From Utricularia gibba (Eukaryota; Plantae; Magnoliophyta), in assembly GCA_002189035.1 (NCBI GenBank), contig NEEC01000027.1:496001-560000 (forward strand): a stretch of DNA of 64,000 bases. The letters run 5' to 3'. This document shows, one piece after another, positions 1,927 to 47,864 of the stretch. A program made the position numbers and the translations under genes. Under the pieces are notes generated by a model. That model searched no databases. It worked only from the letters and a program-made list of their open reading frames with translations, and was not told the origin of the DNA. Numbering within the stretch: the stretch's first letter is position 1; each line of letters opens with the position of its first letter.

Positions 1927-2862
1927 ATGGAACCTGAAGCTTCACCCCCTCCCAGCGGAAGGACCCTCGCCGGCTATGCCGCCCACCAGTCTTCGTGTTC
2001 GGTCACCTTAGCGCTCCCCACCCAGAAGCAGAAGAGCGCCGGCTCCGGATTTGGTGGCGGCAGAGAGGATTGCTGGACAGAAGAAGCTACTGCTCTTCTT
2101 ATCGATGCCTGGGGCGAACGCTACATGGAATTGAGCCGGGGGAATCTGAAGCAGAAGCATTGGAAGGATGTGGCTGAAATTGTAAACACCCAGGAAGGCT
2201 TCAGTAAAACCCCTAAAACTGATGTCCAATGCAAGAACCGGATCGACACTGTCAAGAAGAAGTACAAGACAGAGAAAGCCAAGGTCGTCTCTGGTTGTGG
2301 ACCTAGCAAGTGGAGATTTTTCGATAGGCTTGATGAATTGCTTGTTCCCACAGGGAAGATTAGCTCGGGGTCCCTTCCCTCTGATCCTGATCGACTGACT
2401 CGATCTTCTTCTGCAACGAATGGAAAATTTCAGTACCAGCAGAAGCGTAGCCGCCGTAGGGCCCCTGTGCAGTCCTGCGATGACTCTGAATCGGAAAATT
2501 CTGTTGATTCATCTGATGGGTTTTCTCCTCGGATTTGCAAGAGGCCAAGGTCGACAACTGCTAACTATGCTCCTTCATTGAGGCCTTGTGCAATGAATAA
2601 TAAAGCAGTTGATTCTGCTAGAGGAAATGCAATGGAGCCAAATTCATGGGCCAGCTGCATTCAGGGATTGACACAGACTATCTTGAGATTTGGTGAGGCT
2701 TATGAACAAGTGGAGACTGAGAAATTGCAGCAACTGATGGACATGGAGAAGCAGAGGATGAAACTTACCAAAGAGCTCGAGTTACAGAGGATGCGATGCT
2801 TGATGGAAACTCAGATGGAGCTCTCACAGCTGAAGAACAGGAGGCCCGCGAACAAAGATTAA
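1927..2862 (+). CDS. Trihelix transcription factor, ASIL/SIP1 clade (Myb/SANT-like), single exon
   Basis: 311-aa ORF with REDCWTEEATALLIDAWGERYMELSRGNLKQKHWKDVA..KTDVQCKNRIDTVKKKYK and a C-terminal coiled coil (ILRFGEAYEQVE..MEKQRM). Confidence 0.95.
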   Translation: MEPEASPPPSGRTLAGYAAHQSSCSVTLALPTQKQKSAGSGFGGGREDCWTEEATALLIDAWGERYMELSRGNLKQKHWKDVAEIVNTQEGFSKTPKTDVQCKNRIDTVKKKYKTEKAKVVSGCGPSKWRFFDRLDELLVPTGKISSGSLPSDPDRLTRSSSATNGKFQYQQKRSRRRAPVQSCDDSESENSVDSSDGFSPRICKRPRSTTANYAPSLRPCAMNNKAVDSARGNAMEPNSWASCIQGLTQTILRFGEAYEQVETEKLQQLMDMEKQRMKLTKELELQRMRCLMETQMELSQLKNRRPANKD

Positions 2863-10709: not shown

Positions 10710-12665
10710 TCATGTTAGGGGTTCGCTGGAAGTTGCAGATAAGGAGGGGGCTATGCAGAATTTACCAAGAGAATCGTGTACAGGGGCAACTGCAGTAGGA
10801 GCGACACCGCCGGTAGTTGGCCTACAAAACAAAGCACGGGGTTGCTGTTACACACCAAAAATGCAGCAAACACATCTTATGTATGACACAACGTAACATG
10901 CACACGACTTACAGCCCGATGGAAACTTTGAAGGCATCGTAAATGCCCCACTGAGCACCAGTGAGGGCTCCGATCATGACAATACGAAGGGGAAGGCCGC
11001 GTGTGAGTAAACCCCACAGCCCCAGTCTTCTAACCGCCTGTGTGGAAGGAAAACGAAGGCTTGTTGCTCTAAAACACATTCTTGAAGAAAGGAAGAAGCA
11101 AAAGAGGTGAAAACTGACATCGCCGACAGTAGCATCCTTGGCATTGTTAAGGAAAGATACGAGGTTATCAGCTGGATGGGATACAACCGCGCAAAGAACA
11201 CCAGCAATGTAGCCACCAGCAAAACTGATGGCAAGCTGTGTTGTCTTGCTGCATTCAGATTTGGGTTTGGGGACTGCATGCTTGTAGATTAGCTCCACGA
11301 TTGTCTCAAAGGAGGCAAACTTCATCATTGTATCTGCCACCATATGAGTTAACCTAAGGGAGACAAGTTTTGATACTAGAACGCTCTAAAGGCAAGAGCT
11401 AAACTAAAGGAGAAGTAGCAGAATATCACATAAAATTAGGATGAGATGCTGATAAATGAAAATTATCAACTTACATGGAATCTGACGCCCCCAAAGAGGA
11501 ATTAAGCCCTTGTACAGCCTAAACAAAGAAAGCGTAAGCAACTTCTTTCGTTGAGATAACATAGTGAGGTTGATGCAAAAGGAGACATACCCAAGAGCAC
11601 CTTCAGACTTCACAAAATTGGGGAGTCCATCAGACAATCCTCTAGCGAAACCAGGCTGGGTTTGAACACGAACCTTTACGGCTTCTAAGGGGCACAGCGC
11701 AACATCCGCAATTGCCTCAGCAGACGCCGCACCAGCAAGATAAATCAGAGTCTTGTATTTAGCAAAATTTTCTGACCCAGCCAGGTCTGCAAAATGTTTC
11801 TTTAAGAACTCATAAAATCCAAACTTGCAGGCACCCTGAGCACTATAGCCAAGTACGGTAGGTACCCATCCCTTGAAGAAGCCTTTGAATCCCTGTTCCT
11901 TGAGTAACACTTGGAAACCTGATGAAATACTCCTGAACTTCGCAGGATCAATCTGCAGGGACAAAAAACATCCGTAAAAATTTGATATATTACCCCTTAA
12001 AACGGTAAACAAACAGGTCACTAAATATGCATACGGAGAACTAACAGCAGCTTATATCTTGACGTTCAGATAAACGCTTTTCCCGAATAACGGAACAACA
12101 TCCCGATATACTGAAAAAAGGCCACACACAACACAATTCCGATGGAAAGGTGTAAACAAATTGTGGTACTGCACATAAATCCTTTACAAGAGAAAATACA
12201 ATAAGCTAGCTAGATTGATATCTATTTCTAGATTCCGAAACATGATAAATTCAACGTCTCATTTCATATGTACACCATGAAATCAAGCAAGGTACATAAA
12301 CAAGTGAACAAATCAAAGCATCTACGGAAAGCCTAATTCGTCAAGCAAGATTACAACCGAACCTGCATATTACATTTCACGAGATCAAGAGGTGTGAGCG
12401 CCATGTGAGTCAGGCCGCAACTCAATATTCCGCCGATAGTACACGCAGCGTAGTACTCAGGAGAACAGATCTCAATCCTCCTTGGCACCGCCGGAGCAGG
12501 AATCGCGAAGTCGTGGTCGGAATAAGCAACAGCAGAGGACGATAACTCCTCCCCTAGGCTACACGTCGAGTTTCCTTTCATCGCGCCCAGACTTAGATAC
12601 CTGGAACTGAACGAGGAGTAAAGATAACACGGAATAAGAGAATGACGTTCCGAAAGTAGATCCAT
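10710..12665 (-). CDS. Mitochondrial phosphate carrier (PHT3/MPT)
   Basis: SPEYYAACTIGGILSCGLTHMALTPLDLVKCNMQ, GYSAQGACKFGFYE, ALCPLEAVKVRVQTQPGFA, SHPADNLVSFLN, GAQWGIYDAFKV; last exon LPTTGGVAP.. ends at TGA 10710. Confidence 0.95.
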
Positions 12666-14425: not shown

Positions 14426-16361
14426 ATGTCAGATCATAGAGCGAAAAGGCGTCAAAAAAGAACCTTTACCTTCTTGTTTCTTCTCATCACCATCTCTATA
14501 TTTTTGGAGGGATGTGGTAATGTAGACGCAACCAGGAATCCTTACGGTCGGAGGAAGCAAAAGAGCAAAAGGGCAAGAATTCTAAACAAAGCATATGCCC
14601 CCAGGAGCAACGGCGCTCCTGTTCCACAAGCCTCTGCCTTTCCTCCCTTGATCTACGCACCTCCCCCAACCCAACCAGATGAGGCATCAGCAAACTCAAG
14701 CACAAACTGCATTTTCAATGTCATGGACTTTGGTGCAGTTGGTGACGGGGATACTGATGACACTGCTGCCTTTAGGTCAGCTTGGGACTCGGCATGTCAA
14801 GTGAATAATAGTGTTCTTTTGGTTCCATCAGGCAACACATTCATGATCACCTCCACCATCTTCTCCGGTCCCTGTCAGCCAGGCCTCGTTTTTCAGGTAC
14901 AAGCGAAATCAATCCTGTGCTTTCAGTAATCACACAATGTCAAAGTACTTCCAATCCTCTGTTATTCGGTAATTAGAAACTTGAGGTTCACAGGTGGATG
15001 GGATATTAATGCCTCCAGATGGACCAGACTGTTGGCCAGATTCAGATAGCCATAGGCAATGGCTCGTGTTTTACAGGCTCGATTACATGACTCTTACAGG
15101 CACAGGGACTATTGAAGGAAATGGACAGAAATGGTGGGATCTTCCATGTAAACCTCACAAGGTATGCCCCTTGATTGTCTTGATATCCGCACTTGAGTTG
15201 AGAGTGCATTACTTGCTAATCACTGCATTTTTTCTTACCATGGCACAGGGCCCAAACGGATCAACAATGTCTGGGCCATGCGACAGCCCTGCTGTAAGAA
15301 GTGCATTTTGATCAAGACAAAAACTCTGCTTATTATAAGAGAATGACTGATCTCACATTTATCTTCTTTGCAGCTCATTCGATTTTTCACGAGCAGCAAC
15401 TTAGCTGTGACTGGTTTGCGAATCCAAAACAGTCCCCAATTCCACATTAAATTTGATGATTGCCAAGGAGTACTCATAGATAAGCTATCCATCTCTTCAC
15501 CTAAGTTAAGCCCCAACACTGATGGGATCCACATTGAGAATACTAAGTCCGTCGGCATATACAATTCCATGATTGGCAATGGTATCTACCACAAGCACCC
15601 CAGCTACATATATATTCAGACTGAAACGTGAATATCATTTTTTTTTTGCTTACCAAATGCATCTGACTCAGGGATGACTGCATTTCCATCGGTCCCGGGT
15701 GCTCCAACGTAGATATAGACGGAGTCACATGCGGGCCAAGTCACGGAATCAGGTATCATCGATTTTATTTTTTTCAGTACAAACTTGAAAAAAACTGCCC
15801 ACATTTTTTTCAGTACAAGTCACGAGTGTTTTCAATCCTTGATCACATCCCTGTCAACAGTATCGGGAGCCTTGGCGTCCACAACTCCCGCGCCTGCGTT
15901 TCCAACATTACCGTACGCAACGCGGTAATCAGAAACTCGGACAATGGACTTCGAATCAAGACGTGGCAGGGCGGTACCGGTTCGGTCTCTGGCATAACCT
16001 TCGAGAACATCCAAATGGAAAACGTGAGAAACAGCGTGATAATCGATCAATACTATTGCCTGACGAAGGCGTGTAGGAACGAAACAGCGGCAGTTTACCT
16101 TACGGATGTAACATTCAGAAACATCAAAGGAACCTACGACGTCCGTAGCCCCCGATTCACTTCGCCTGTAGCGAGACGGTGGCTTGCACGAATATCACGA
16201 TGTCGGAGGTAGAGCTCCTGCCGTACGAAGGTATTTTGGTGGACGATCCTTTCTGCTGGAACGCCTACGGCGTCCAAGAAACGCTCACCATCCCACCGAT
16301 CGATTGCCTGCAAGAAGGATTCCCGGACACACTCGCCGAGAATGAGCTCTACGGCTGTTGA
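14426..16361 (+). CDS. Polygalacturonase (GH28), with an apparent -1 frameshift at 16149-16153
   Basis: [43 protein letters not shown] and [10 protein letters not shown] motifs, plus an N-terminal hydrophobic anchor. Confidence 0.95.
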
Positions 16362-17039
16362 AGCCCAATTGTACGGATGATTAGTTTAGATCCCATTTCA
16401 TGGGAAATGTAAATGAGCAATAATCCCAAGTTTTTTCTAAAGAAAAAATACTAATAAATAAATGTTAATTTATTTAAAAAATATTTAATGAAGTATTAAT
16501 ATTCGTCATCGGTACGAATATTTGAAATGTGGACAGGAAACGCGGGCGTGGCTCTCCCTCTTCTTCTCCGTATAGGGAACGGAAATGGCGTTTCTGTAGA
16601 TTCCAGTGGATTACAAGCATCCCACGCAACGCACAACCCAGCGAGCAGCTCTCAAGTGCAGCAGCGCAGCCGCAGCCGCAGCCAGCAAGATTTCGTTGGT
16701 CTGCGTTCGGTTCGGTATATCCTCTCTTTCTCTTTATGGCTTTAGGTTAAAACGGGTCTATTCCCATCAGAACATCATCCCGATCTTCATCAATGAGTAT
16801 GTCTGCCCATGTCGAGAGCTGATTTCAACCACCAGCCTTCTCTGTTTTCCAGCTGCTTACCGATATAGGAACCCTGAACGACTATATATCGATTGAGTTA
16901 GTTTTTTCTGCTCTGCCTTTCATTCGTGGAGTGGCGATTTCCCTTTTCCTACTGGAACTCTAAACGTTGCGATATCCCTTTGCTTGCCGTACTTCGACTG
17001 TGATTGCAGGATCCTCAGTTTCTTTAGTTTTCTGTAGGA

Positions 17040-19329
17040 ATGGATGGCTATGCTGCTGCAAATCAGACTCTGTATGGAATGTATATGGTACTTCTGCATT
17101 TTCATTGAGGGGCGAGTTTGTGAAATTTTTTTTTTATTCTATATTGTAATCGGTAGCTTCTCCTAGATTCAAGGTGGTGAGGTCACACCTGGGTATTTCA
17201 TTGAACAATCATTTTACAGCCCTGGCCCCTCTGGGTATGGACATGTATCTGCAGGTATAAATTAGTAAACTAGGTTCAAAGTTCTTACCTTTGGTTGTCT
17301 GTGATTATTCATTGGACTCCGTTAGTCTTTTTTTAGGTGTTGAGCCAGTCAGTGATTTTGAAGATGACCAGGAAGGCCTTGGTTTGGATGGTGATGATAT
17401 TCATTATCCTGTGAGTCACTATTATCTGGAACTTGAATTTACAAACTGGATACGAGATGTTGAAATTGATGAATCTTCTGGCAGGGTGTGACACATGAAA
17501 ATCCGTCCTATTTGTATTATGTTCCCAGCTATGTATACACTGAATCTCCATATAACCCATACAATCCTTATATTCCTGGGGCTGTGCTGGTAGAAGAGGA
17601 TGGGTCGACTTCTGCATCTTACCACTACACTGTTCTCCCCTCATGTACGGATTGTGCATCATTACCTGCACAGATGCCTGTGGTTATCCTTTCAGGTGCT
17701 GAAGTCACTAGCAATGGAACTGGAACCTCATTCACCACCAATATTCCAAGTGCTGAATGCAATTTCTATAAAGTAGGTAAATCTGCAAATACTAGATCGA
17801 GACTGCACCATCCACTCCAAACTCCTTCCGGTAGGTTTAAGCATACAGCGTCAGCTAAGGCTTCATTGGTGAGAATGCATACATGATCTTTTTTCTTCTA
17901 CTTCCCTAGATGCGACCATCTACTGAAGTGTTCGAATCTTGTATTTTAGGCCCAAAGAGCTCAAGCTCAAAAGAATGGGACGGGCAGTGATACGTTATCA
18001 TCCGATGGTAGCCAGATTAATAGCTGTCTTACGTTTTCTAATGACTCCAATTTGAGCACTCAAGGATGCACATCTATTGATGAACCCGAACCTGAGCTTC
18101 CCAAAGATGTGACAGTGTCCCCTCCTCATACATGGAATGGTTTGAGATGGACCTCGGGACCAAAGAAGCCAAAGAATGAGTTGGTGGTCAAGGCCTATAC
18201 CACAAGAGCTGGAAATTCAGATCCGCAGGGAAACATCAGAATATTCAGGGATCAATATAACCGTAATGATTTCTGTGTGGATTATGTGAATGCAAAATTC
18301 TTTGTGATCAAGTCATATAGTGAGGATGATGTTCATAAGGGTGTAAAGTACAATGTATGGTCATCTACCCCTGCTGGGAACAAGAAGCTTAATGCTGCCT
18401 ATGAGGACGCTCAGAGATTAGATCCAGAAGATGCCAAAGGGTGCCCTGTCTTTCTCTTCTTTTCGGTGAGCTATCATGTTTGGTAAAAGTTGTGGATGGC
18501 ACGAAGTAGATGCATTTAAGTTCATCATTTTACGGACATTCATCTTTCTCTCTTTTAGGTGAATGCCAGTGGGCAGTTCTGCGGGGTTGCTAGGATGATT
18601 GGCCCTGTCAACTTCAAAGCAGATATGGATTTCTGGCAGCAAGATAAATGGAGCGGCAGTTTTCCAGTGGAATGGCACTTCATAAAGGATGTTCCAAATT
18701 CCATGTTAAGGCACATCACTTTAGAGAAGAATGAGAACAAACCAGTCACAAATAGCAGAGACACGCAAGAGGTATCCATCCGTTGCCCTTGGTGATTTTC
18801 TCCTGTATGCTGTATCATTGCGCGTAAGATTGAAATCTGCTCCCTTCCATGAGTATTATTTCAGATACCCCGCAAGAAAGGTTTGGATATGCTGCGAATT
18901 TTCAAAAATCACATTTCAAAGACGTCTTTGCTTGACGACTTCATGTACTACGAAACCAGACAGCTAATCTTGCTTCAAGAGAGAGCCAAACAAAAAGGTA
19001 ACGCCACTGATGTTGCCAACCTTTGTCGAAGCACTTCCTCAGGCAGTTTGGAAGACCACTCTGTACCTGAGAAACATTATTCTGAAGAGGATACTGCCAA
19101 GAGAGGCTCGCATGCTTCAGCTGGCACAACACCACCAAAATCATTGGTCGTTCCGGAGAGGGGTGCACCAGCTCTGATTCCAAAGACACCTGAGCCAGCG
19201 TACGAGTTGCCTACAGCCTCCGTTTCTAGTACAAAGAGTTGCGCCAGCATCACGATAGGATCCTTGCCAGTATCAATAAGTGGTCCGAAAGGTGCAACAG
19301 TTCCACTTCAGCCTTGCAGAAACAGGTGA
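17040..19329 (+). CDS. YTH-domain m6A reader (ECT family); start codon approximate
   Basis: [71 protein letters not shown] and [12 protein letters not shown]. Confidence 0.93.
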
Positions 19330-19794
19330 AATTGGGTGTTCACCAACTTGACGGGGGTTCCTGGTGCACTGCTACAGGGAATACTGTCGATGAGCCTGTG
19401 AATTTGTACTCATGTTTCTTGTTGGTTTTGCTAAGCTGGTAGTGCAACATGAACAGCCACAGTGACTTGTTTTGCTCCCCCTCAGTCATACCACACCATT
19501 CTCAGGAGATTCAGTCCACTTTTGCCCCCATACGAGAGAGACATCAGTACTTGTTTTCTATGATTATTGTAAGAATGTTGATCAACTGCTCTGTACAGGA
19601 GCCAGACAAGTGTCTCCTATCTGGGCACTGGGTAAATATTTCAGAAAAGTAGGTTCTGCGGCAGCTGCTTGCGCAACCAATACGTGGAAGAAGCATGTTC
19701 GCCGGGAAGTCTCAGCCTGCCACGTTATCTTCATGCGCTCGGTTTAAAAGCTGGGGCAGAGCACCTCCGTGTTCGTGAAGCGGTGAAGATCAAA

Positions 19795-20538
19795 ATGCCG
19801 GGCCTGACGATCGGAGACACTCTCCCCGACCTGGAAGTGGAGACAACGCAAGGGAAGCTGAAGCTCCATGACTTTGTGGGGGATTCCTTCGCCATCATCT
19901 TCTCTCATCCCGGCGATTTCACGCCGGTTTGTACGACGGAGCTGGGGATGATGGCTGCCTACTCCGACAAGTTCGCCGCCAGAGGCGTGAAGCTGCTCGG
20001 TATCTCCGCGGATGATGTCAGCTCCCACCGAGAGTGGATCAAGGATGTCGAAGCCTGCAGCAACGGCCACACAGTGACCTACGCCATCGCAGCTGATCCG
20101 GAGCGGCGGATCATCAAGCAGCTCAACATGGTGGATCCCGATGAGAAGGACTCCGCAGGGAACAACGTGCCGTCGCGCGCGCTCCACATCGTCGGCCCTG
20201 ACAAAAGGGTATTTATTCTTTCGTCTACAACAAGCATTCTCTAATGGTGCTGCATTTTAGGCTGAGCTTCACATCGTGAGAGTGTGCAGATCAGGCTGAG
20301 CTTCCTGTACCCTGCATCCACCGGACGGAACATGGATGAGGTGCTGCGGGTGGTGGACTCCCTGCTGAAGGCGTCCAAGCACAGGATCGCCACTCCGGCG
20401 AACTGGAAGCCCGGGGAGCCGGTGCTGGTGGCTCCCAGCGTGTCTAACGAGGAGGCCAAGAAGCTGTTTCCGCAGGGGTACACCGTGACGGGCCTCCCTT
20501 CAGGCAAAGACTACCTGCGGTTCACCAACGTAGACTGA
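19795..20538 (+). CDS. PER1: 1-Cys peroxiredoxin, 2 exons
   Basis: [59 protein letters not shown]. Confidence 0.96.
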
Positions 20539-41608: not shown

Positions 41609-42403
41609 GATTTCACCCAACCTGCAGTGAACACAGCAGAAACCGACGCCGTCTTCGTTAACGTGGTTCACCACCTGTTCATATGTAAACGAGAGCGAGA
41701 GAGAGAGACGAACCAACCAGTGAAGCAGAGAGAGATCGACAACGCTGCGAAGGTGGCGAGGGTGCCCCTTTATAGGATGGTTAAACTTAACCACGGTTAG
41801 CCTAGCTGCAGTTAGGTTCAACCCAACCCCAACGGCACTCTCCCTTCCATTGACTTCACTTAACAAATAAACAATATTTTAAAAAATTAAAAAAAAATAA
41901 ATATAAAAGAAGATGATGAGGAATGGGTTAGCGTCTAAATGTATAGTAGTTGAGAATTGCACGTTAAAAAACGAACCATATGGTGAGACACACGGATCGT
42001 ATTTAAATTTAATCAATAAAAGTGGGGGTTAGTGTTTTAAAAAAAACGAGTTCAATTTATTTCTTTTTATTTCAATATCATTTTTGTTGAAATTATTAGT
42101 TTTCATCATATTTATTAAAAAAAACAAATTATTAAATCCAACTAAACTAAGCATGTGTTGAAAGAAGAGATGGAAGAGGTTTACAGATACCGAGGACCAG
42201 TACGTGATTGCGATTGCTTTGCATTGTATTGCTATCCTGCAAAAGCGATAAGATCAGATCGGGTCCATTTTTGTATTCTTTTTTTAATAGCCATCCACCT
42301 ACTCAGTGATTTTATTTTTATTTTTATTTTTCAGGTCTCTCGTGCTGTGTGCACTGCACCCATCCATATGTCATGTCCCGCCGGGAATGATATTAAACTA
42401 ATA

Positions 42404-42621
42404 GGGTGTGTTTTTTACATGATAAATTATACCTGAGGTAAGTTTTATTTGAAATAAAATATGTTATATAACAGTATAATTTTATTCCAATCCTTACTCT
42501 TTTATTATTTTATTCCATATTCATGAAATGAATTATTATGATTATAATTTATCTAGTTTATCAAGCATTATGTTTTTTTTCATTTAATTATTACATTTTA
42601 TAATTTCTACCAAACACACTC
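42404..42621. mobile_element. Putative Tourist/PIF-Harbinger-like MITE (218 bp)
   Basis: Ends GGGTGTGTTT and AAACACACTC (9/10 inverted match), identical 3-nt ATA flanks (42401-42403, 42622-42624), very AT-rich non-coding interior. Confidence 0.55.
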
Positions 42622-42903
42622 ATAGTGTTTGAGTGAATAACCATACAAATCTAAATTTTACAAGAAATACTTTACTCGTAATAAATAAAATGTAAAATTG
42701 TAAGAATTGAGTATTCAAAATTGATGATATCATCCAAATGAAGTTGGGTAGTTAATCCATATGTATATATTTGTGTATTATGCTGAAGAGAGAAAGGGCA
42801 TGCAACTGCAATGCATTCATTGACAGCAACGGAGAACAGGTACAGAACAGTGAGTGAAAAGGAGGGGCAAATCAATCAATCAATCAATCAGTCAGTGAGT
42901 GAG

Positions 42904-45484
42904 TCAATCAGCTCCTATATCTGTTGTGTTCCAAATGCATATCTCAAGATCCAGACTTCCTGAAAAGTCCAAGAAGCCGAAGGGGATGAGCAGGAAGTCG
43001 ACGAGGGGCGGGCCTTCCACCCTCCCGGGGAAGTTGTTCGTGTACGACTTCAGTCTCAGGCAGCTGTTCCCTCGTTCTGATACGATGTCGTACAGGTACT
43101 GCTCCTTTGAGGAACCAGGGCTCACGCAGGTTATGAATACGACATGCCCCACGGCCTCGGTTCCTTTGCTCAGGAGGAAGAGCATCCCATCCTTCTCGGC
43201 TTGTAGGGTGGAAAAAGTTTCATTCTTGGCTATGCTCACGGGGAAGGGGCAGTTGTACTGAAAACGCCTGCCGGAGTCCCAATGCTTGCTGCTGAAATGC
43301 TCCGACAGCTGGTCGGATGAGCCAATGAAATGGCACTTGCTGATGGGGCAACTGCAGGGTGAAAAGGAGCAGACACCCTCGTGCTCCTTTCTCCTGGACT
43401 GGTCTCCAATGTCTGTGCATCCGTACTGTGCATTTCGACAGGGTATTGGATCAGAAATGTCGAAACCCATACTGACTCCGATGCCCTCATTGCCAATGAT
43501 GGACATGTTTCCCTGAATATGAAAAAGTTTCCCCATTGATTAACATCATCAAAGTATTGTAAGCCCATGAGAGGAGGAGAATCATCGGTTACCTCTGCCG
43601 TGAGCATGTCATCCCCATTAACTTGGCCCTGCGCTGCCTCCTGAAAAATAAGCTGAGCTGAAGTGCTTGCTAATCATGGATTCAATCACAATAAGAGTGG
43701 TTGAAATGAAGAAATCAAGGCGATCCCGATAAAATATAGTTCAATTACTAAGCCCCCCTTCCACCATTTCAACATCAAGAATTCCTGAAAGCATAAAAAG
43801 TAGCTGTCTTTCACTTAAAATCTGAACACGCCTAGACCCCTTGTGTAGAAGCTACTTTGGACGAAATAAAATGCAGACAGCCAGCAAAATGAAACACATT
43901 GAGAACACAAGGGTACCTGCTCAATAAGAGCATAGCTATCAAAATCTGATGGTATTACTGGCATTGCAAAGCTCCCTGCCAGGGCTCTACAGCTCAGCAT
44001 TCCCAACCCAAGGCCTCTTTCCTTACAAACCACCTGCAGAGAAAGAAGTGAAGAAATCATCCTCAGACACGATGACACGGGCAAGCACCATGCATGTAAC
44101 ATACCTCTCCACATCCATAACCTCCAAGTTCTCTCTCTTTCTTTTCTCGCTCACTGATCTCTTCCTCGCCCCATGAAGCCAGGCATGGAAAGACAGCCGG
44201 GGAAAGTTCAGATGGTTCTCCAACAGCAATACTCTCATAGTAAAAAAGCTGAAAAAAGTTCGGAAGTTGAAACAACAACAAGTTGTCAAAACACGGGAGT
44301 AACAAAAATGGCTAACCTGTAGAAACAAGAGACAACCACCAACAGCATGTTGCTTACCCTGGCGGTACCGTGCTACCTCTCGTACTAATCGGTCAAGTAA
44401 GAATTTGGCCCAATTATAATGATGGACAGTATCCATATTTGTCAGGAAATGAAGAAATGATGGACTAACATCAAGCCTTGCTGTAGGGCACAAGAGAGTG
44501 CCTAGCACATACAAAAGAAAAGATCTTCTAAAGTCCTCTCCTGATTCTGGAGCTGCCAATCTTTCCTCAAGGAGACGGACAGAAATTCCATGATTTGTAG
44601 CATTGTACTTCTTACGCAGTTCAGAAATTAATTCATCAGGTCCAGAATTAACAACATCCTTTCCACTAGATGCCAAGCCCATGACTAGCTCAACATCCCG
44701 AGGAGTTAGAGGTATACGCTCACCACATATCTCCAAGGTGCGCCTAACAGTGTTAAATTTGTCCAACAACCAAAGACACAAACTTCGTCGTAGTGTTCGA
44801 CATCTGAGACTAAGGATACTACCAAATCCCATGCTCTTTACAGCAGTTTTCTGGTCAGGAGTGAGGCGTTGTAACAGATTTAATAATCGACCAGGAGAGC
44901 ACCTAGTTACAAGTTTGGTCTGCACAATATGCATCATAAGTTCAAGACTCATCAGACACTCAACACATTAGATGATGAAAAGTAGCTAACACCTACCTGT
45001 CTTCTTGGCTTGGGATTCGTAGGTGTGCTGCTCAAATATCTGTCCCATACTTCACGCGCTCGATTAGTGTACTTTGCTTTCTCTTCAGGAGTCATCAGCT
45101 TCCAAGCATCTGAAGCAGCTTTTGTTGCCTGAAACAGCCATTGAGGAAAATTATGAAATTTTGTGTTTCAGAAAATGAAAGTTAACTAGGGCTTTAAGTA
45201 AATGGGATTCCATACAGCTTTCAGCCCTGAAGACTCTGGATGGGTGGCAGTATACTCCTTGATAAATTCCCGGCTACAAGAATACGCAAAATAATTAACA
45301 CAGAGATATCAAAAGAGGCCATATTTAAGTTGATGAAGTACCTAAAATGCACCCAAGAGCATGCCGGACGTGATACTCCTCCATCTTGCTTCTTCTTCCT
45401 CCTCCGTTTCTGACTGCCTTCACACTCCGCTCCCTCTGGCCCATTTCTTGTTGCCATCATCATATCCTCTTCTTCTTCTGCCAT
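42904..45484 (-). CDS. HMG-box + Mutator/PMD-like domain + RING-less SINA (zinc finger/TRAF) protein, predicted 8 exons, ~617 aa
   Basis: Exons 45484-45342, 45273-45216, 45128-44997, 44919-44317, 44248-44105, 44033-43917, 43640-43593, 43512-42904. All introns are GT-AG and phases are consistent (1854 nt). The HMG and central domains are firm; the join to SINA is predicted. Confidence 0.72.
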
Positions 45485-46342
45485 GGATAATACAGGACCA
45501 TTTAACTTGCATTCCAACAGAGTCAAATCAATTTCCGGCATCAAGGCTGCAATAGAAAGCTGATTCCAGAAAAGATCAAATACGCAGGGGAATATCCAAA
45601 CATTTCATCGGTACGACGAATGGAACTCCCAGGAGTATTCCCGTTTTCTGAATGCAACAGAGCAAGAGTTGGATGGTATTCACGAGCGACGGTACCCACG
45701 CAAACCCCAATTCGCATCCCAATGATGAAAACAAAATTCGCCTCGCGAGAACAAAAACTAACTCGTAGAGAAATATAGAAGAAGAAGCTCACCAATCCCC
45801 AAGCAGTGATTTACTGTTCCGCCGTTTGGTGGGTAGCCTTTGTTCTCCCGCAGTAGTGCTCCGGTCTCTTTTTCACCTTCGTTCTTTCATTCTTTCTTCA
45901 ATTTAGTTTAATTCGGGTCTGGCCGAGCCCATTTATTCCTTTCCCGGTTGGCGCCCATGGATCGCCGTCCGGCCCGGCACATTTTCCAGGCCCAGTTTCT
46001 GAAACCACAGCATCAATTTTCTCTGTTGTTTCATTTACAATCCCTTCAAGAAACCATTTTTACCTTGAAAAGAGTTGCTGGGACGGGCATGCAGTAATAT
46101 ACAAATGAGCTAGACAGCATTACAAGCAGCAAACCCAGAGGAAACGGGCTCGAACTTGTTGCAGATGCAAGAACAAAACCAGGCACAAGAGCCAACAGAG
46201 AACTAAACGGATGAAAGAAGCAGCATGCACAAGAAGATGAGCGGCACCCCCATGTTGTAAAATGATACGACCCACTAAGCAGTGAGGTCTCACCAATCTT
46301 TGGAAGTGGATTCTTCCTGGTAAACGTCTGCTGGAACTGATG

Positions 46343-47683
46343 TCATGACCATATGGTTAGCTCCCATACAGGTTCTTGATTCATAAATGTATCAGGGACA
46401 AAAAGACATTTCCCTGGCCGGTGATGCTCAGTCCACTGTGGTGTGTTCTCCATCACACCACATAGGCTAATACTACAACCATCTTCTGTATCCTTAGCAG
46501 CAAGTGCATAATTGAATGCTTCATCTGAAGCGGTAGGAGCGATGCAGGCTACATAGGCATACATCCCGTTCCTTTCAAGATGACGATTTAGAATGAAAAC
46601 AATGCCTTCATCCTCCTCTACAAAAACAACATGATTCCTACCATGATCCAGTGAAAAGTCTAGGGTGTCATCAAGGTGGATTTTCTTGTAAGATGATGGA
46701 TGCGTAGCTTCAAGATGGGAATACAAGTCCTTGTAGAAGCCAGAATGATAACATCTAGGAAAAGGGCATGAGCAAGGCGCATATTTGCATGCCTTCTCAT
46801 GATTGGATTTCTTACTGTACTTGAAGGTTTCCACACATCCATGTACCATGTTTGGACATTGGACCATAACTGATTCAATAATCTTTTCAAGAGCCCTGCA
46901 GCGGTTGTATCCGATTGGTAAACAGCAGCTTCCACATTTATTCATCATTCCCTTGCAACACAACTCGCACGCTATATGACCATTGTCGCACTGCACAAGA
47001 TCAAAAAAAAACTGCATTTTGTTAAGCACATCCAACTGATTAATAGAAATACAGAGAATCAACACCCTTGTTTTGAAACTGCACTTTCACTGGCAGAAGA
47101 TCGTGAACCCTTAAACATGAGTTTACATTGACGTAGTTTAATCAAATTCCATGATCCTTGATGGGGGACTAAGGAAAAAATGTGGCTGTTCTGAATAAAT
47201 GGAACATGAACCCGGGTGTGTGAAATTGATCAAGAAAAAGAAAACCACCTGATATACAGGCGATTTGAGAGGTTCGACACAAATAGGGCATTCCAGTGCA
47301 TCTGGTTCAAGGGTGACGACGATCCTTGCGTCTGAAGTTCTATGAGGCTTCCCCAACTTCGAAACCCCACGGCCACCGATATCAGGCGTTGAAATCTGCT
47401 GCGGTCCAGGGGTTAACGCCACGGCCCTCAATTCAACTTCTCTACCGCTTTCTTCATCTGGAGGAAGGGGAGAAGTAGGCCCGTATTCGTGCTCGCCATC
47501 CGACTCCAATTCTTCCTCAATTCGCAACGCTCCACCCAACTGAGGCTGGGAAGTGGAATCCGAAGACGAGGAGGCGTCATAGTGGGCAGAGAGCCGAATT
47601 TTTTTCCACGACGAGCTCTGGCTGCTAAATCTCCGGATCCGGCGATTCCCATCTCCGTTTCCACCTACAGAAAACCTTGCCAT
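46343..47683 (-). CDS. SINA-like RING E3 ubiquitin ligase, 2 exons
   Basis: LECPICVEPLKSPVYQ / CDNGHIACELCC..CGSC..RCRALEKIIES..CPNMVHGC..HEKACKYAPCSCP. Confidence 0.92.
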
Positions 47684-47864
47684 TTTTCCCGACCACCCAT
47701 GAAAATTTAACAATTTATATTTTGCCATAAGTTACTTTTGCCCTAAGGACAATTATTTGATTGTGCGAGGGCTCGGAAGCAAATTATCTCGCCATCACCT
47801 AAACGTTACTTGTTCCCGTAGATGTTAGATCCATTCCGCTGGTGAGCGACATACCAAGGAAGAA

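What the first reader, a model, noticed from the sequence alone, without database searches (positions are those of the whole stretch)
42904..45484. One gene joining an HMG box, a transposon-type domain and a RING-less SINA module
Seen in sequence: eight exons join in one open frame (143+58+132+603+144+117+48+609 nt) through GT-AG introns of 68, 87, 77, 68, 71, 276 and 80 nt. The product is an HMG box (WVHFSREFIKEY..DAWKLMTPEEKAKY), a central domain (AVKSMGFGSILSL..LWLLDKFN..ITP-like RDVELVMGL..FRRSFLLYVLGTLLCP..YNWAKFLLDRL..GGCLLFLQLFY), then SIAH-type zinc fingers (CRNAQYGC..HEGVC..CSCPISKC..H..KH) and a TRAF-like tail. Known: the central motif set is typical of ORFs from Mutator-like/Ulp1-carrying plant transposons and the PMD/MAIN group; SINA proteins normally need an N-terminal RING, which is missing here. 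Inference: a domesticated TE domain with DNA-bending and E3-substrate-binding modules could be a chromatin adaptor or a dominant-negative partner of SINA ligases. The ORF track hides it by splitting it into pieces. I cannot tell whether homologues are already annotated.
Basis: partly seen in the sequence, partly recalled or inferred. Interest (0 to 1): 0.8.

Follow-up and report, generated by a model that had tools for sequence, protein, structure and literature searches.

The report
Conserved HMG–PMD–RING-less SINA plant gene
This is a real, expressed plant gene whose single mRNA joins a DNA-binding HMG box, a transposon-derived PMD domain and a SINA substrate-binding module without its RING; the same gene is already predicted, but apparently unstudied, in over a hundred core eudicots.

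Summary
The eight minus-strand exons at 42904-45484 join in frame through seven GT-AG introns into 617 codons. All seven junctions appear in RNA contigs of one organism from three studies, and two contigs span them all. Pfam and fold searches confirm an HMG box, a PMD domain, two SIAH-type zinc fingers with all ligands, and a TRAF-like SIAH1 fold. No RING is present.

One correction: the main isoform has a 5'UTR intron (45478-45792) that removes the proposed ATG. Its start is then probably Met8 (45463), giving 610 aa.

The gene is not a lineage oddity. Collinear proteins of 590-640 aa with the same three domains are predicted in more than 100 core eudicots. They carry names such as "uncharacterized" or an automatic "RING-type E3". 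The window's product is 74-79% identical to Lamiales members. All three domains are under strong purifying selection (pN 0.05-0.2 against pS 0.55-0.8).

Nelumbo has only HMG+PMD. Triticeae carry a parallel PMD-PMD-RING-SINA fusion. I found no paper on this architecture.

Function is inferred, not shown: most likely a chromatin-tethered, non-catalytic SINA-type adaptor or decoy. It is a member of a catalogued but unstudied family, of moderate interest.

The parts
45793..45883 (-). Alternative non-coding 5' leader exon (5' end not defined)
   Evidence: X2 and X3 RNA contigs join 45793 to 45477. The part seen holds no ATG.
45478..45792 (-).
   Evidence: Joint 45477/45793 in X2 and X3, and the unspliced X1 record 4 at 45442-45732; donor and acceptor read.
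45342..45484 (-). Coding exon 1: N-terminal tail, basic KRRRKKK stretch, start of the HMG box. Start codon is 45484 (unspliced leader) or 45463 (spliced leader)
45216..45273 (-). Coding exon 2 (HMG box helix 1-2)
44997..45128 (-). Coding exon 3 (HMG box C-terminal half; the whole box, residues about 38-105, maps to 45015-45373)
   Evidence: Pfam HMG_box E 3.5e-6. The orthologue model matches HMG boxes at Z 9-10.
44317..44919 (-). Coding exon 4: core of the PMD (plant mobile domain)
   Evidence: Pfam PF10536 at 37.4 bits, above the cutoff. Mean identity of 110 orthologues to the window's residue is 83%.
44105..44248 (-). Coding exon 5: conserved C-terminal extension of the PMD
   Evidence: 73% mean identity; PMD hit in orthologue P0001 runs to residue 342.
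43917..44033 (-). Coding exon 6: variable linker, predicted disordered
   Evidence: 29% conservation; pLDDT below 50.
43593..43640 (-). Coding exon 7: 48-nt linker micro-exon
   Evidence: Junctions 43639/43916 and 43511/43592 are present in all four runs.
43279..43446 (-). Two SIAH-type zinc fingers (C440 C447 H459 C463; C468/C470 C475 H487 H492), within exon 8
   Evidence: Pfam Sina_ZnF E 3.6e-12; phmmer alignment to SIAH1; the ligand set is kept in 83 of 110 orthologues.
42904..43278 (-). TRAF-like beta-sandwich (SIAH substrate-binding domain fold) plus the stop codon, end of exon 8 (exon 8 = 42904-43512)
   Evidence: AF2 model pLDDT 84.5; Foldseek to SIAH1 SBD E 2e-11, TM 0.6-0.68; VIA Z 13.3.
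42797..42903 (-). 3'UTR, containing a (GATT)n microsatellite
   Evidence: RNA contigs reach 42797 and 42806; repeat at 42873-42888.
46343..47728 (-). Upstream neighbour, a separate expressed 375-aa SINA-like E3 gene with an intact C3HC4 RING (exon 1 47249-47728, exon 2 46343-46990). It is context, not part of the gene
   Evidence: RNA contigs and the loose end mapped to 47252; translation; Pfam Sina_ZnF and a weak Sina_RING.

Best explanation
Shown: 42904-45484(-) is one bona fide nuclear protein-coding gene of a lamiid, Lamiales-like plant. Its single mRNA encodes, in order: a basic stretch, one HMGB-type HMG box, a transposon-derived PMD, a disordered linker, two SIAH-type zinc fingers and a TRAF-like SIAH substrate-binding fold. 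It has no RING. It belongs to a low-copy family that is collinear across core eudicots and under strong purifying selection in all three domains.

Inferred mechanism: the HMG box, and possibly the PMD, tether the protein to DNA or chromatin. The PMD supplies the chromatin-regulatory or partner-binding function known from MAIN/MAIL PMD proteins. The RING-less SINA module binds SINA clients and/or dimerises with RING-bearing SINA-like ligases. The protein would therefore act as a non-catalytic chromatin-tethered adaptor that brings an E3 in trans. Alternatively it would act as a decoy that shields clients, as reported for RING-less SINAT6.
For: Gene reality: the frame and splice sites are as described. 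All seven junctions are seen in RNA contigs from three studies, two of which span the whole CDS. Intron-free mRNA contigs from two other Lamiales-like samples carry uninterrupted 611-aa and 607-aa orthologous ORFs.

Domains: Pfam; SIAH1 zinc ligands aligned; AF2 plus Foldseek and VIA matches to the SIAH1 SBD and to HMG boxes. The nearest Swiss-Prot folds are Arabidopsis SINA-like 10/2/4 (E 1e-16), ahead of the SINATs (1e-9).

Family: more than 100 collinear HMG+PMD+Sina_ZnF proteins in asterids, rosids, Dillenia, Santalales and Saxifragales. The window's product is 74-79% identical end to end to Lamiales members.

Selection: pN/pS is 0.05/0.55 (HMG), 0.06/0.56 (PMD), 0.18/0.78 (ZnF) and 0.14/0.81 (SBD). 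Conservation is high in the domains and low in the linker. No RING appears in the protein, its introns or any unmerged orthologue.

Mechanistic precedents: PMD-C proteins associate with chromatin at DNA motifs and oppose Polycomb silencing (bioRxiv 10.1101/2024.09.27.615353). RING-less SINAT6 hinders SINAT1-mediated ATG6 proteolysis (PMC11605875, PMC10734943). PMD and SINA are also fused in Triticeae (PMD-PMD-RING-SINA), which is Rosetta-stone-type support for a functional link.
Against: Nothing here tests DNA binding, dimerisation, client binding or ubiquitination. The SBD is only 18-20% identical to SIAH1, and Pfam's Sina_TRAF model was not among the matches at E up to 1, so the groove and dimer interface may have changed. 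Asteraceae orthologues have lost the Cys ligands of the first zinc finger. Nelumbo's counterpart lacks the SINA module altogether, so that module may be dispensable for a core HMG-PMD function. RING-less Arabidopsis SINA2 was reported to have E3 activity in vitro (PMC6048857), so 'non-catalytic' is an assumption. The PMD part of the full-length model is of low confidence.
Confidence: 0.55

Rival explanations
1. The SINA module has been neofunctionalised as a plain protein-protein interaction domain of a chromatin factor. It would recruit non-ubiquitin partners to HMG/PMD-bound loci, with no remaining link to SINA ligases or protein turnover.
For: The SBD sequence is strongly diverged from SIAH/SINAT: 13-20% identity and no Sina_TRAF Pfam hit. 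It has family-specific invariant motifs such as HWDSGRRF and PPxDFLLIP. Zinc finger 1 is lost in Asteraceae while the rest is kept.
Against: The full SIAH SBD fold and eight zinc ligands are retained in most lineages. A RING-bearing PMD-SINA fusion in Triticeae points to a ubiquitin connection.
Confidence: 0.25
2. The protein is itself an active E3 ligase despite lacking a canonical RING, as reported in vitro for Arabidopsis SINA2.
For: PMC6048857 reports in-vitro E3 activity of RING-less SINA2. UniRef automatically names many orthologues 'RING-type E3 ubiquitin transferase'.
Against: No RING, B-box or other E2-binding domain is detected by Pfam in the window pieces or in the full-length orthologue scanned. 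The unmerged orthologues' precomputed Pfam lists show only HMG_box, PMD and Sina_ZnF. The region before the zinc fingers is variable and predicted disordered. The database names are automatic.
Confidence: 0.08
3. The RING is supplied in cis. Read-through or alternative splicing from the upstream RING-bearing SINA-like gene (46343-47728) would yield a long RING-SINA-HMG-PMD-SINA isoform, as modelled in Oldenlandia and Deinandra.
For: Merged 1040-aa and 1001-aa models with the same gene order exist. In X3 the neighbour's 3'UTR reaches at least about 45970, and this gene's leader exon is seen from 45883, only about 90 nt away.
Against: The neighbour's ORF ends with a stop at 46343, and no junction skipping it was seen. 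In X1 the two genes are covered by separate contigs with zero depth between 45781 and 46102. Erythranthe has no SINA-like gene within 10 kb upstream. The merged models have one member each.
Confidence: 0.05
4. Two separate genes (HMG-PMD, and a RING-less SINA ORF starting at ATG 43536) have been wrongly joined; or the locus is a transposon-borne or decaying ORF rather than a host gene.
For: The SINA exon is a stand-alone 210-aa ORF with its own ATG. An intron-6-retaining contig in X1 would give a 432-aa HMG-PMD protein. Quercus has a 391-aa HMG-PMD isoform. The PMD's relatives are TE-like.
Against: Spliced junctions 6/7 and 7/8 are present in all four runs at full depth, against about 8 for the retained form. 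The fused ORF is conserved in more than 100 species and in mRNA contigs. pN is far below pS. There are no direct or inverted repeats of 25 bp or more in 40.5-47.8 kb, and there is only one copy in the window.
Confidence: 0.03

Closest known systems
Predicted, uncharacterised HMG_box+PMD+Sina_ZnF proteins of core eudicots (e.g. Salvia splendens LOC121747663, Olea europaea LOC111382790, Prunus persica PRUPE_3G152100; one source names P0199 'HMG_box/Sina/PMD domain-containing protein')
   Same: Same three domains in the same order, same length (about 590-640 aa), no RING, and collinear alignment at 62-79% identity.
   Different: Nothing essential; the window's gene is an orthologue. In this species the last exon has an unusually high GC3 (0.66 against 0.38). 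I found no functional study for any member.
Arabidopsis PMD-C proteins MAIN, MAIL1, MAIL2, and the MAIL3 PMD-PP7 fusion
   Same: A TE-derived PMD domesticated into a host gene under purifying selection, fused to another functional module. This matches the 'Rosetta stone' logic of PMC7156037. A chromatin and gene-regulation role has been established for PMD-C proteins (bioRxiv 10.1101/2024.09.27.615353).
   Different: The partner domains here are an HMG box and a SINA module, not PP7. The Pfam match covers only the first half of the PMD model (positions 44-180 of 347). The nearest non-orthologous relatives are Ulp1/DUF1985-linked ORFs. The clade (A, B or C) was not assigned.
RING-less SINA proteins of Arabidopsis (SINAT5/SINAT6 in Col-0, SINA2) and the 'modified SINA motif without RING' class (1447 of 4856 plant SINA genes, PMC10734943)
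   Same: A SINA zinc-finger/SBD module without a functional RING. There is precedent for competitive protection of substrates (PMC11605875).
   Different: Those are stand-alone SINA proteins. This one is fused to DNA/chromatin modules and is conserved as such across core eudicots. By fold it is nearer to the SINA-like (SINAL) clade than to the SINATs.
Human/mouse SIAH1 substrate-binding domain (PDB 4i7b, 1k2f, 4c9z)
   Same: Two zinc fingers with all eight ligands, plus a TRAF-like beta-sandwich. Foldseek E 2e-11, TM 0.6-0.68; VIA Z 13.3.
   Different: Only 17-20% identity; no RING upstream; the peptide groove and dimer interface were not compared.
Triticeae PMD-PMD-RING-SINA proteins (e.g. 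Triticum aestivum LOC123076795, 1032 aa)
   Same: The same PMD subtype (27% identity, including the N-terminal 'RCSP...GFGS...LWL' motifs) fused N-terminally to a SINA module (27% identity over 161 aa).
   Different: Two PMDs, no detectable HMG box, and a retained Sina_RING. Whether the fusion is shared or convergent is unknown.

Membership tests
HMG-box (PF00505) | Profile score above Pfam's gathering threshold | tested here: met
   Exon 3 alone scores 27.8 bits against 25.4. Full box in orthologue P0001 scores 38.1 bits.
HMG-box (PF00505) | Three-helix L-shaped fold | tested here: met
   AF2 model of orthologue P0151 has helices 41-56, 62-76 and 79-99 at pLDDT 80-88. VIA Z 9-10 to Abf2p, Sox11, BAF57 and HMGB boxes. 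Tested on the orthologue, not on the window's own sequence.
HMG-box (PF00505) | Binds and bends DNA | not testable with these tools
   Needs EMSA or ChIP.
Plant mobile domain (PF10536) | Profile score above the gathering threshold | tested here: met
   Exon 4 scores 37.4 bits against 34.9; P0001 scores 46.3 bits. Only profile positions about 43-216 of 347 are matched.
Plant mobile domain (PF10536) | Relatives encoded by transposon-like, multi-copy ORFs | tested here: met
   Of 53 distant relatives, 11 carry Ulp1 C48, 8 carry DUF1985 and 7 carry an HMG box. They are lineage-specific multi-copy clusters in Quercus, Camellia and Citrus.
Plant mobile domain (PF10536) | Assignment to clade PMD-A, PMD-B or PMD-C | not tested
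   No reference MAIN/MAIL or TE PMD sequences could be obtained.
SINA/SIAH E3 ubiquitin ligases | N-terminal C3HC4 RING that recruits an E2 | tested here: not met
   No RING-type Pfam hit in any exon piece or in orthologues. tblastn with RING-bearing SINA-like proteins finds the RING only in the neighbouring gene.
SINA/SIAH E3 ubiquitin ligases | Two SIAH-type zinc fingers with eight Cys/His ligands | tested here: met
   Sina_ZnF 46.9 bits against 32. The ligands align with those of SIAH1 and are kept in 83 of 110 orthologues.
SINA/SIAH E3 ubiquitin ligases | TRAF-like substrate-binding/dimerisation fold | tested here: met
   AF2 pLDDT 84.5. Foldseek top 17 hits are all SIAH1/2 SBD, E down to 2e-11. 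VIA Z 13.3.
SINA/SIAH E3 ubiquitin ligases | Sequence signature of the SINA TRAF-like domain (Pfam Sina_TRAF) | tested here: not met
   Only Sina_ZnF is reported at E up to 1 for exon 8 and at E up to 0.01 for P0001. This fits the 'modified SINA motif' class of PMC10734943.
SINA/SIAH E3 ubiquitin ligases | E3 activity, dimerisation, degron binding | not testable with these tools
   Needs biochemistry or a multimer prediction.
Core-eudicot HMG-PMD-SINA orthogroup (uncharacterised) | End-to-end collinear similarity and identical domain order | tested here: met
   BLASTP covers residues 1-617 against 1-620 at 78.7% (P0151), and 62-79% to 40 members. Pfam architecture shown.
Transposable-element ORF (not domesticated) | Terminal repeats, multiple copies, relaxed selection | tested here: not met
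   No repeats of 25 bp or more in 40.5-47.8 kb. Single copy in the window. pN far below pS. Genome-wide copy number was not testable.

The most novel reading that the evidence does not exclude
The HMG-PMD-SINA family is a core-eudicot chromatin regulator that physically couples the PMD pathway (anti-Polycomb, TE silencing) to SINA-like ubiquitin ligases. It would recruit or block a RING-bearing SINA-like partner at specific loci. It may have gone unstudied because no Brassicaceae member appeared among the hits listed here. The independent PMD-PMD-RING-SINA fusion in Triticeae would then be a second solution to the same coupling.
Probability: 0.2. Interest if true: 0.7.

Novelty: new member of a known kind. 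Interest (0 to 1): 0.45.

Why it matters
PMD proteins are among the least understood chromatin regulators in plants. MAIN, MAIL1 and MAIL2 were only recently tied to DNA motifs and to opposing Polycomb silencing. A deeply conserved gene that joins a PMD to a DNA-binding HMG box and to a ubiquitin-ligase substrate-binding module gives a concrete hypothesis for what PMDs connect to. A parallel PMD-SINA fusion in wheat relatives strengthens that hypothesis. The family appears in crops and model eudicots such as tomato and potato relatives, poplar, cotton, cacao, coffee, Prunus, Malus and Erythranthe, so it can be tested genetically. For genome annotation, the result also shows that the automatic name 'RING-type E3 ubiquitin transferase' given to many orthologues is misleading, because they have no RING.

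Tried and rejected
1. Two-gene or chimeric-model hypothesis: rejected by spliced RNA contigs and conserved fused ORFs.

2. TE-borne or decaying ORF: rejected.

3. Pre-fusion state in Nelumbo. I looked for a SINA-like sequence within 10 kb on either side of the Nelumbo HMG-PMD gene and found none, so origin by fusion of neighbouring genes is not supported there.

4. Conserved adjacency to a RING-bearing SINA-like gene. It is seen in this window and implied by merged models in Oldenlandia and Deinandra. It is absent within 10 kb in Erythranthe, where the neighbours are CCB1 and methionyl-tRNA formyltransferase. The adjacency is therefore not universal, and no formyltransferase lies in this window.

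5. A word-based protein search with exon 8 alone returned only last-exon ORF fragments of orthologues and no stand-alone SINA, so the donor SINA clade could not be placed by a tree. Fold ranking points to the SINA-like clade.

6. PMD structure. There was no PDB sequence match and no PDB fold match in the full-length model. The PMD region of that model is of low confidence.

7. A true dN/dS could not be computed because synonymous sites are saturated (pS 0.55-0.82), so only pN against pS is reported.

8. Ten variants seen in other runs of the same organism (3 synonymous, 7 non-synonymous; the one checked, residue 583, is a variable site) are too few to interpret.

9. Literature searches for the HMG+PMD(+SINA) architecture found nothing relevant.

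10. Earlier scan notes held nothing for this place or these words.
Full report

Yes. All seven introns begin with GT and end with AG. The joined 1854 nt are open for 617 codons and end in a stop. Mechanical ORF listing shows only pieces of 309 aa and 210 aa.

**2. Transcript evidence**

Nine runs labelled RNA (by the tool's guess) of one organism, from three studies, hold 10-66% of the sampled words of the stretch. I laid four of them on 42400-47200.

- All seven predicted junctions were recovered as CT..AC joints on the plus strand.
- X2 record 6 (1975 nt) and X3 record 8 (2045 nt) run from the 3'UTR (42806 and 42797) through every exon.
- X6 record 11 crosses exons 6, 7 and 8. X1 contigs cover exons 3-6, and a loose end matches exon 7.

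Two details were new.

- X2 and X3 carry a further intron, 45478-45792 (GT..AG), which joins a leader exon (45793-45883) to 45477. This removes the ATG at 45484. The first ATG of that mRNA is Met8 at 45463, in frame, giving 610 aa. X1 has an unspliced leader (45442-45732) that keeps ATG 45484.
- X1 also has a low-depth contig that retains intron 6 (depth 7.9, against 52-72 for the spliced form). It would encode a 432-aa HMG-PMD protein without the SINA module.

**3. What the domains are**

- **HMG box.** Exon 3 matches Pfam HMG_box. The full box scores 38 bits in the orthologue P0001.
- **PMD.** Exon 4 matches PMD above Pfam's threshold.
- **SINA zinc fingers.** Exon 8 matches Sina_ZnF. Its Cys/His ligands align one for one with those of SIAH1.
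- **TRAF-like tail.** Pfam does not recognise the tail. An AlphaFold2 model of the window's own exon 8 (58-row alignment, mean pLDDT 84.5) has the SIAH substrate-binding fold. The 17 best PDB matches are all SIAH1/SIAH2, with E down to 2e-11 and TM 0.6-0.68, well ahead of the TRAF and MATH domains.
- **Full-length orthologue model.** A model of the closest orthologue found (P0151) gives SIAH1 at Z 13.3 for residues 436-614 and HMG boxes at Z 9-10 for residues 33-105. It gives no PDB match for the PMD, which is modelled with low confidence, and a disordered linker.
- **Nearest SINA clade.** Among Swiss-Prot models the nearest are Arabidopsis SINA-like 10, 2 and 4 (E about 1e-16, up to 29% identity), ahead of SINAT1-4 and animal SIAH (1e-9).
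- **No RING.** No RING is detectable in the protein, in the scanned orthologue or in its introns. tblastn with RING-bearing relatives finds a RING only in the neighbouring gene.

**4. It is a conserved host gene, not an oddity**

An exhaustive HMMER search with exon 4 found a 628-aa Salvia splendens protein with 92% identity in the PMD, at the same position in the protein. Using that protein as a query returned 169 relatives, of which the best 120 are listed. Nearly all are 590-640 aa with HMG_box + PMD + Sina_ZnF. They come from:

- Lamiales, Gentianales, Solanales, Ericales, Cornales and Asterales;
- Malvales, Rosales, Fagales, Malpighiales, Sapindales, Fabales and Carica;
- Santalales, Saxifragales and Dillenia.

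Their names are 'uncharacterized protein', 'hypothetical protein' or the automatic 'RING-type E3 ubiquitin transferase'. One entry (P0199) is named for all three domains.

The window's product aligns end to end with them, at 74-79% to Lamiales members and 62-69% to rosids. The source is therefore probably a lamiid, near or within Lamiales. Two Logan contigs of 2.2 and 2.1 kb hold uninterrupted 611-aa and 607-aa orthologous ORFs. They are mRNAs of other species with the same fusion.

Conservation across 110 orthologues, measured as mean identity to the window's residue:

| Region | Conservation |
|---|---|
| HMG box | 81% |
| PMD (exon 4) | 83% |
| PMD extension (exon 5) | 73% |
| Zinc fingers | 51% |
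| TRAF-like part | 64% |
| Linker (exons 6-7 and start of exon 8) | 16-29% |

Proportions of non-synonymous (pN) and synonymous (pS) differences against the mRNA contig L001:

| Domain | pN | pS |
|---|---|---|
| HMG | 0.05 | 0.55 |
| PMD | 0.06 | 0.56 |
| Zinc fingers | 0.18 | 0.78 |
| SBD | 0.14 | 0.81 |

Synonymous sites are saturated, so a true dN/dS cannot be given. Every domain is nonetheless clearly under purifying selection.

There is one copy in the window. There are no direct or inverted repeats of 25 bp or more around it. The window is ordinary gene space, with a trihelix/Myb-SANT gene, a mitochondrial carrier and a peroxiredoxin.

**5. Evolutionary context**

- **PMD relatives.** The next-closest PMDs (27-42% identity) are lineage-specific ORFs, several of them in multi-member clusters. 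Of 53 long ones, 11 carry a Ulp1 C48 protease, 8 carry DUF1985 and 7 carry an HMG box. Examples are Quercus, Corchorus, Camellia, Citrus, Hordeum and Eragrostis. It also suggests that HMG+PMD existed as a module outside this gene.
- **Nelumbo.** Nelumbo has an HMG+PMD protein (59% identity in the PMD) with a different C-terminus lacking any SINA match, and no SINA sequence within 10 kb. No monocot or early-diverging orthologue of the three-domain form was found, within the limits of the word-based searches. The SINA module was therefore probably added in the ancestor of core eudicots, or lost in Nelumbo.
- **Asteraceae.** Orthologues in Asteraceae have lost the cysteines of zinc finger 1 but keep finger 2 and the beta-sandwich.
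- **Triticeae.** Unexpectedly, Triticeae have a conserved 1017-1032-aa protein, annotated in several Triticum and Aegilops species. It has two PMDs of the same subtype followed by a Sina RING, zinc finger and SBD. PMD and SINA have thus been joined at least once more, or anciently, this time with the RING retained.

**6. The neighbour**

Directly upstream on the same strand lies a separate, expressed 375-aa SINA-like gene with an intact C3HC4 RING. Its exons are 47249-47728 and 46343-46990. It is only 25% identical to the SINA module of this gene.

Merged gene models in Oldenlandia and Deinandra show the same order, but Erythranthe lacks such a neighbour. In X1 the two genes are covered separately, with no depth between them. 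In X3 the neighbour's 3'UTR and this gene's leader exon come within about 90 nt of each other. Occasional read-through therefore cannot be excluded.

**7. How it most likely works**

Shown: the architecture, its expression as one mRNA, its conservation and the selection acting on it.

Inferred: the basic stretch and HMGB-type box place the protein on DNA or chromatin. The PMD supplies the chromatin-targeting or partner-binding role described for MAIN, MAIL1 and MAIL2. Those proteins associate with chromatin at specific motifs and oppose Polycomb silencing, and their PMD is predicted to resemble the DNA-binding DUF1985 of VANC (bioRxiv 10.1101/2024.09.27.615353; PMC7156037).

The SINA module, which has no E2-recruiting RING, would then do one of two things. 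It could bind clients and a RING-bearing SINA-like partner, acting as an adaptor with the E3 supplied in trans. Or it could compete with such ligases and protect clients, as reported for RING-less SINAT6 with ATG6 (PMC11605875; summarised in PMC10734943).

I put about 0.55 on this general 'non-catalytic, chromatin-tethered SINA-type adaptor or decoy' reading. The rivals are:

- a SINA fold re-used as a generic interaction domain (0.25);
- intrinsic E3 activity despite the missing RING, as claimed for SINA2 in vitro (PMC6048857) (0.08);
- a RING supplied in cis by read-through from the neighbour (0.05);
- a mis-joined or TE-borne ORF (0.03).

**8. Novelty and verdict**

The gene is an orthologue within a family that public annotation already holds in more than 100 species. 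The architecture itself is therefore catalogued, and RING-less 'modified' SINA genes are common (1447 of 4856; PMC10734943).

I could not find any paper that describes or studies the HMG+PMD(+SINA) combination. I found no orthologue among the Swiss-Prot matches, which include Arabidopsis, and no Brassicaceae member among the listed hits. From memory, the Arabidopsis HMG-box inventory has no PMD-containing member, but I did not test this.

The finding is real and correctly read.

Noticed in passing
window 46343-47728 (-): Separate expressed SINA-like E3 gene (375 aa, two exons, intact C3HC4 RING) directly upstream on the same strand. In X3 its 3'UTR has a 65-nt intron (45999-46063) and comes within about 90 nt of the HMG-PMD-SINA leader exon.
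   Followed up: partly
window 42904-43512 (exon 8): GC3 of the last exon is 0.66, against 0.38 for the rest of the CDS. The orthologous mRNAs L001 and L002 show 0.49 and 0.42. Synonymous difference in this exon exceeds 0.75. This is an unexplained local composition shift; GC-biased gene conversion is one possibility.
   Followed up: partly
window 43593-43945 (intron 6): The X1 contig retains intron 6 at low depth and carries a 14-nt insertion behind 43649 relative to the window. The retained form would encode a 432-aa HMG-PMD protein lacking the SINA module. Quercus suber has an annotated 391-aa isoform of that kind (P0002).
   Followed up: partly
window 42864-42913: A (GATT)n / (CAAT)n microsatellite lies just 3' of the stop codon (42873-42888). 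The reads tool skipped 42864-42913 as a repeat and noted that reads seem cut there.
   Followed up: no
P0061/P0370 cluster (Triticum, Aegilops): A conserved 1017-1032-aa Triticeae protein has two PMDs of the same subtype followed by a Sina RING, zinc finger and SBD. It is a parallel PMD-SINA fusion that keeps the RING.
   Followed up: partly
Asteraceae orthologues (e.g. P0205, P0218, P0238, P0261, P0263): The three cysteines of SIAH-type zinc finger 1 are replaced throughout the Asteraceae orthologues. Finger 2 and the TRAF-like part are kept, and Pfam no longer reports Sina_ZnF for them.
   Followed up: partly
L004 (Erythranthe guttata) 15306-18032; P0166, P0191, P0323: A methionyl-tRNA formyltransferase gene lies just downstream of the orthologue in Erythranthe and is merged into the gene models of Phtheirospermum, Liquidambar and Pistacia. 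This conserved neighbour is not present in this window.
   Followed up: partly
window 1927-2862 (+), 11404-12021 (-), 19669-20244 (+): Other ORFs in the window match Myb/SANT-like (trihelix) DNA-binding, mitochondrial carrier and AhpC/TSA peroxiredoxin families, so this is ordinary gene space.
   Followed up: no
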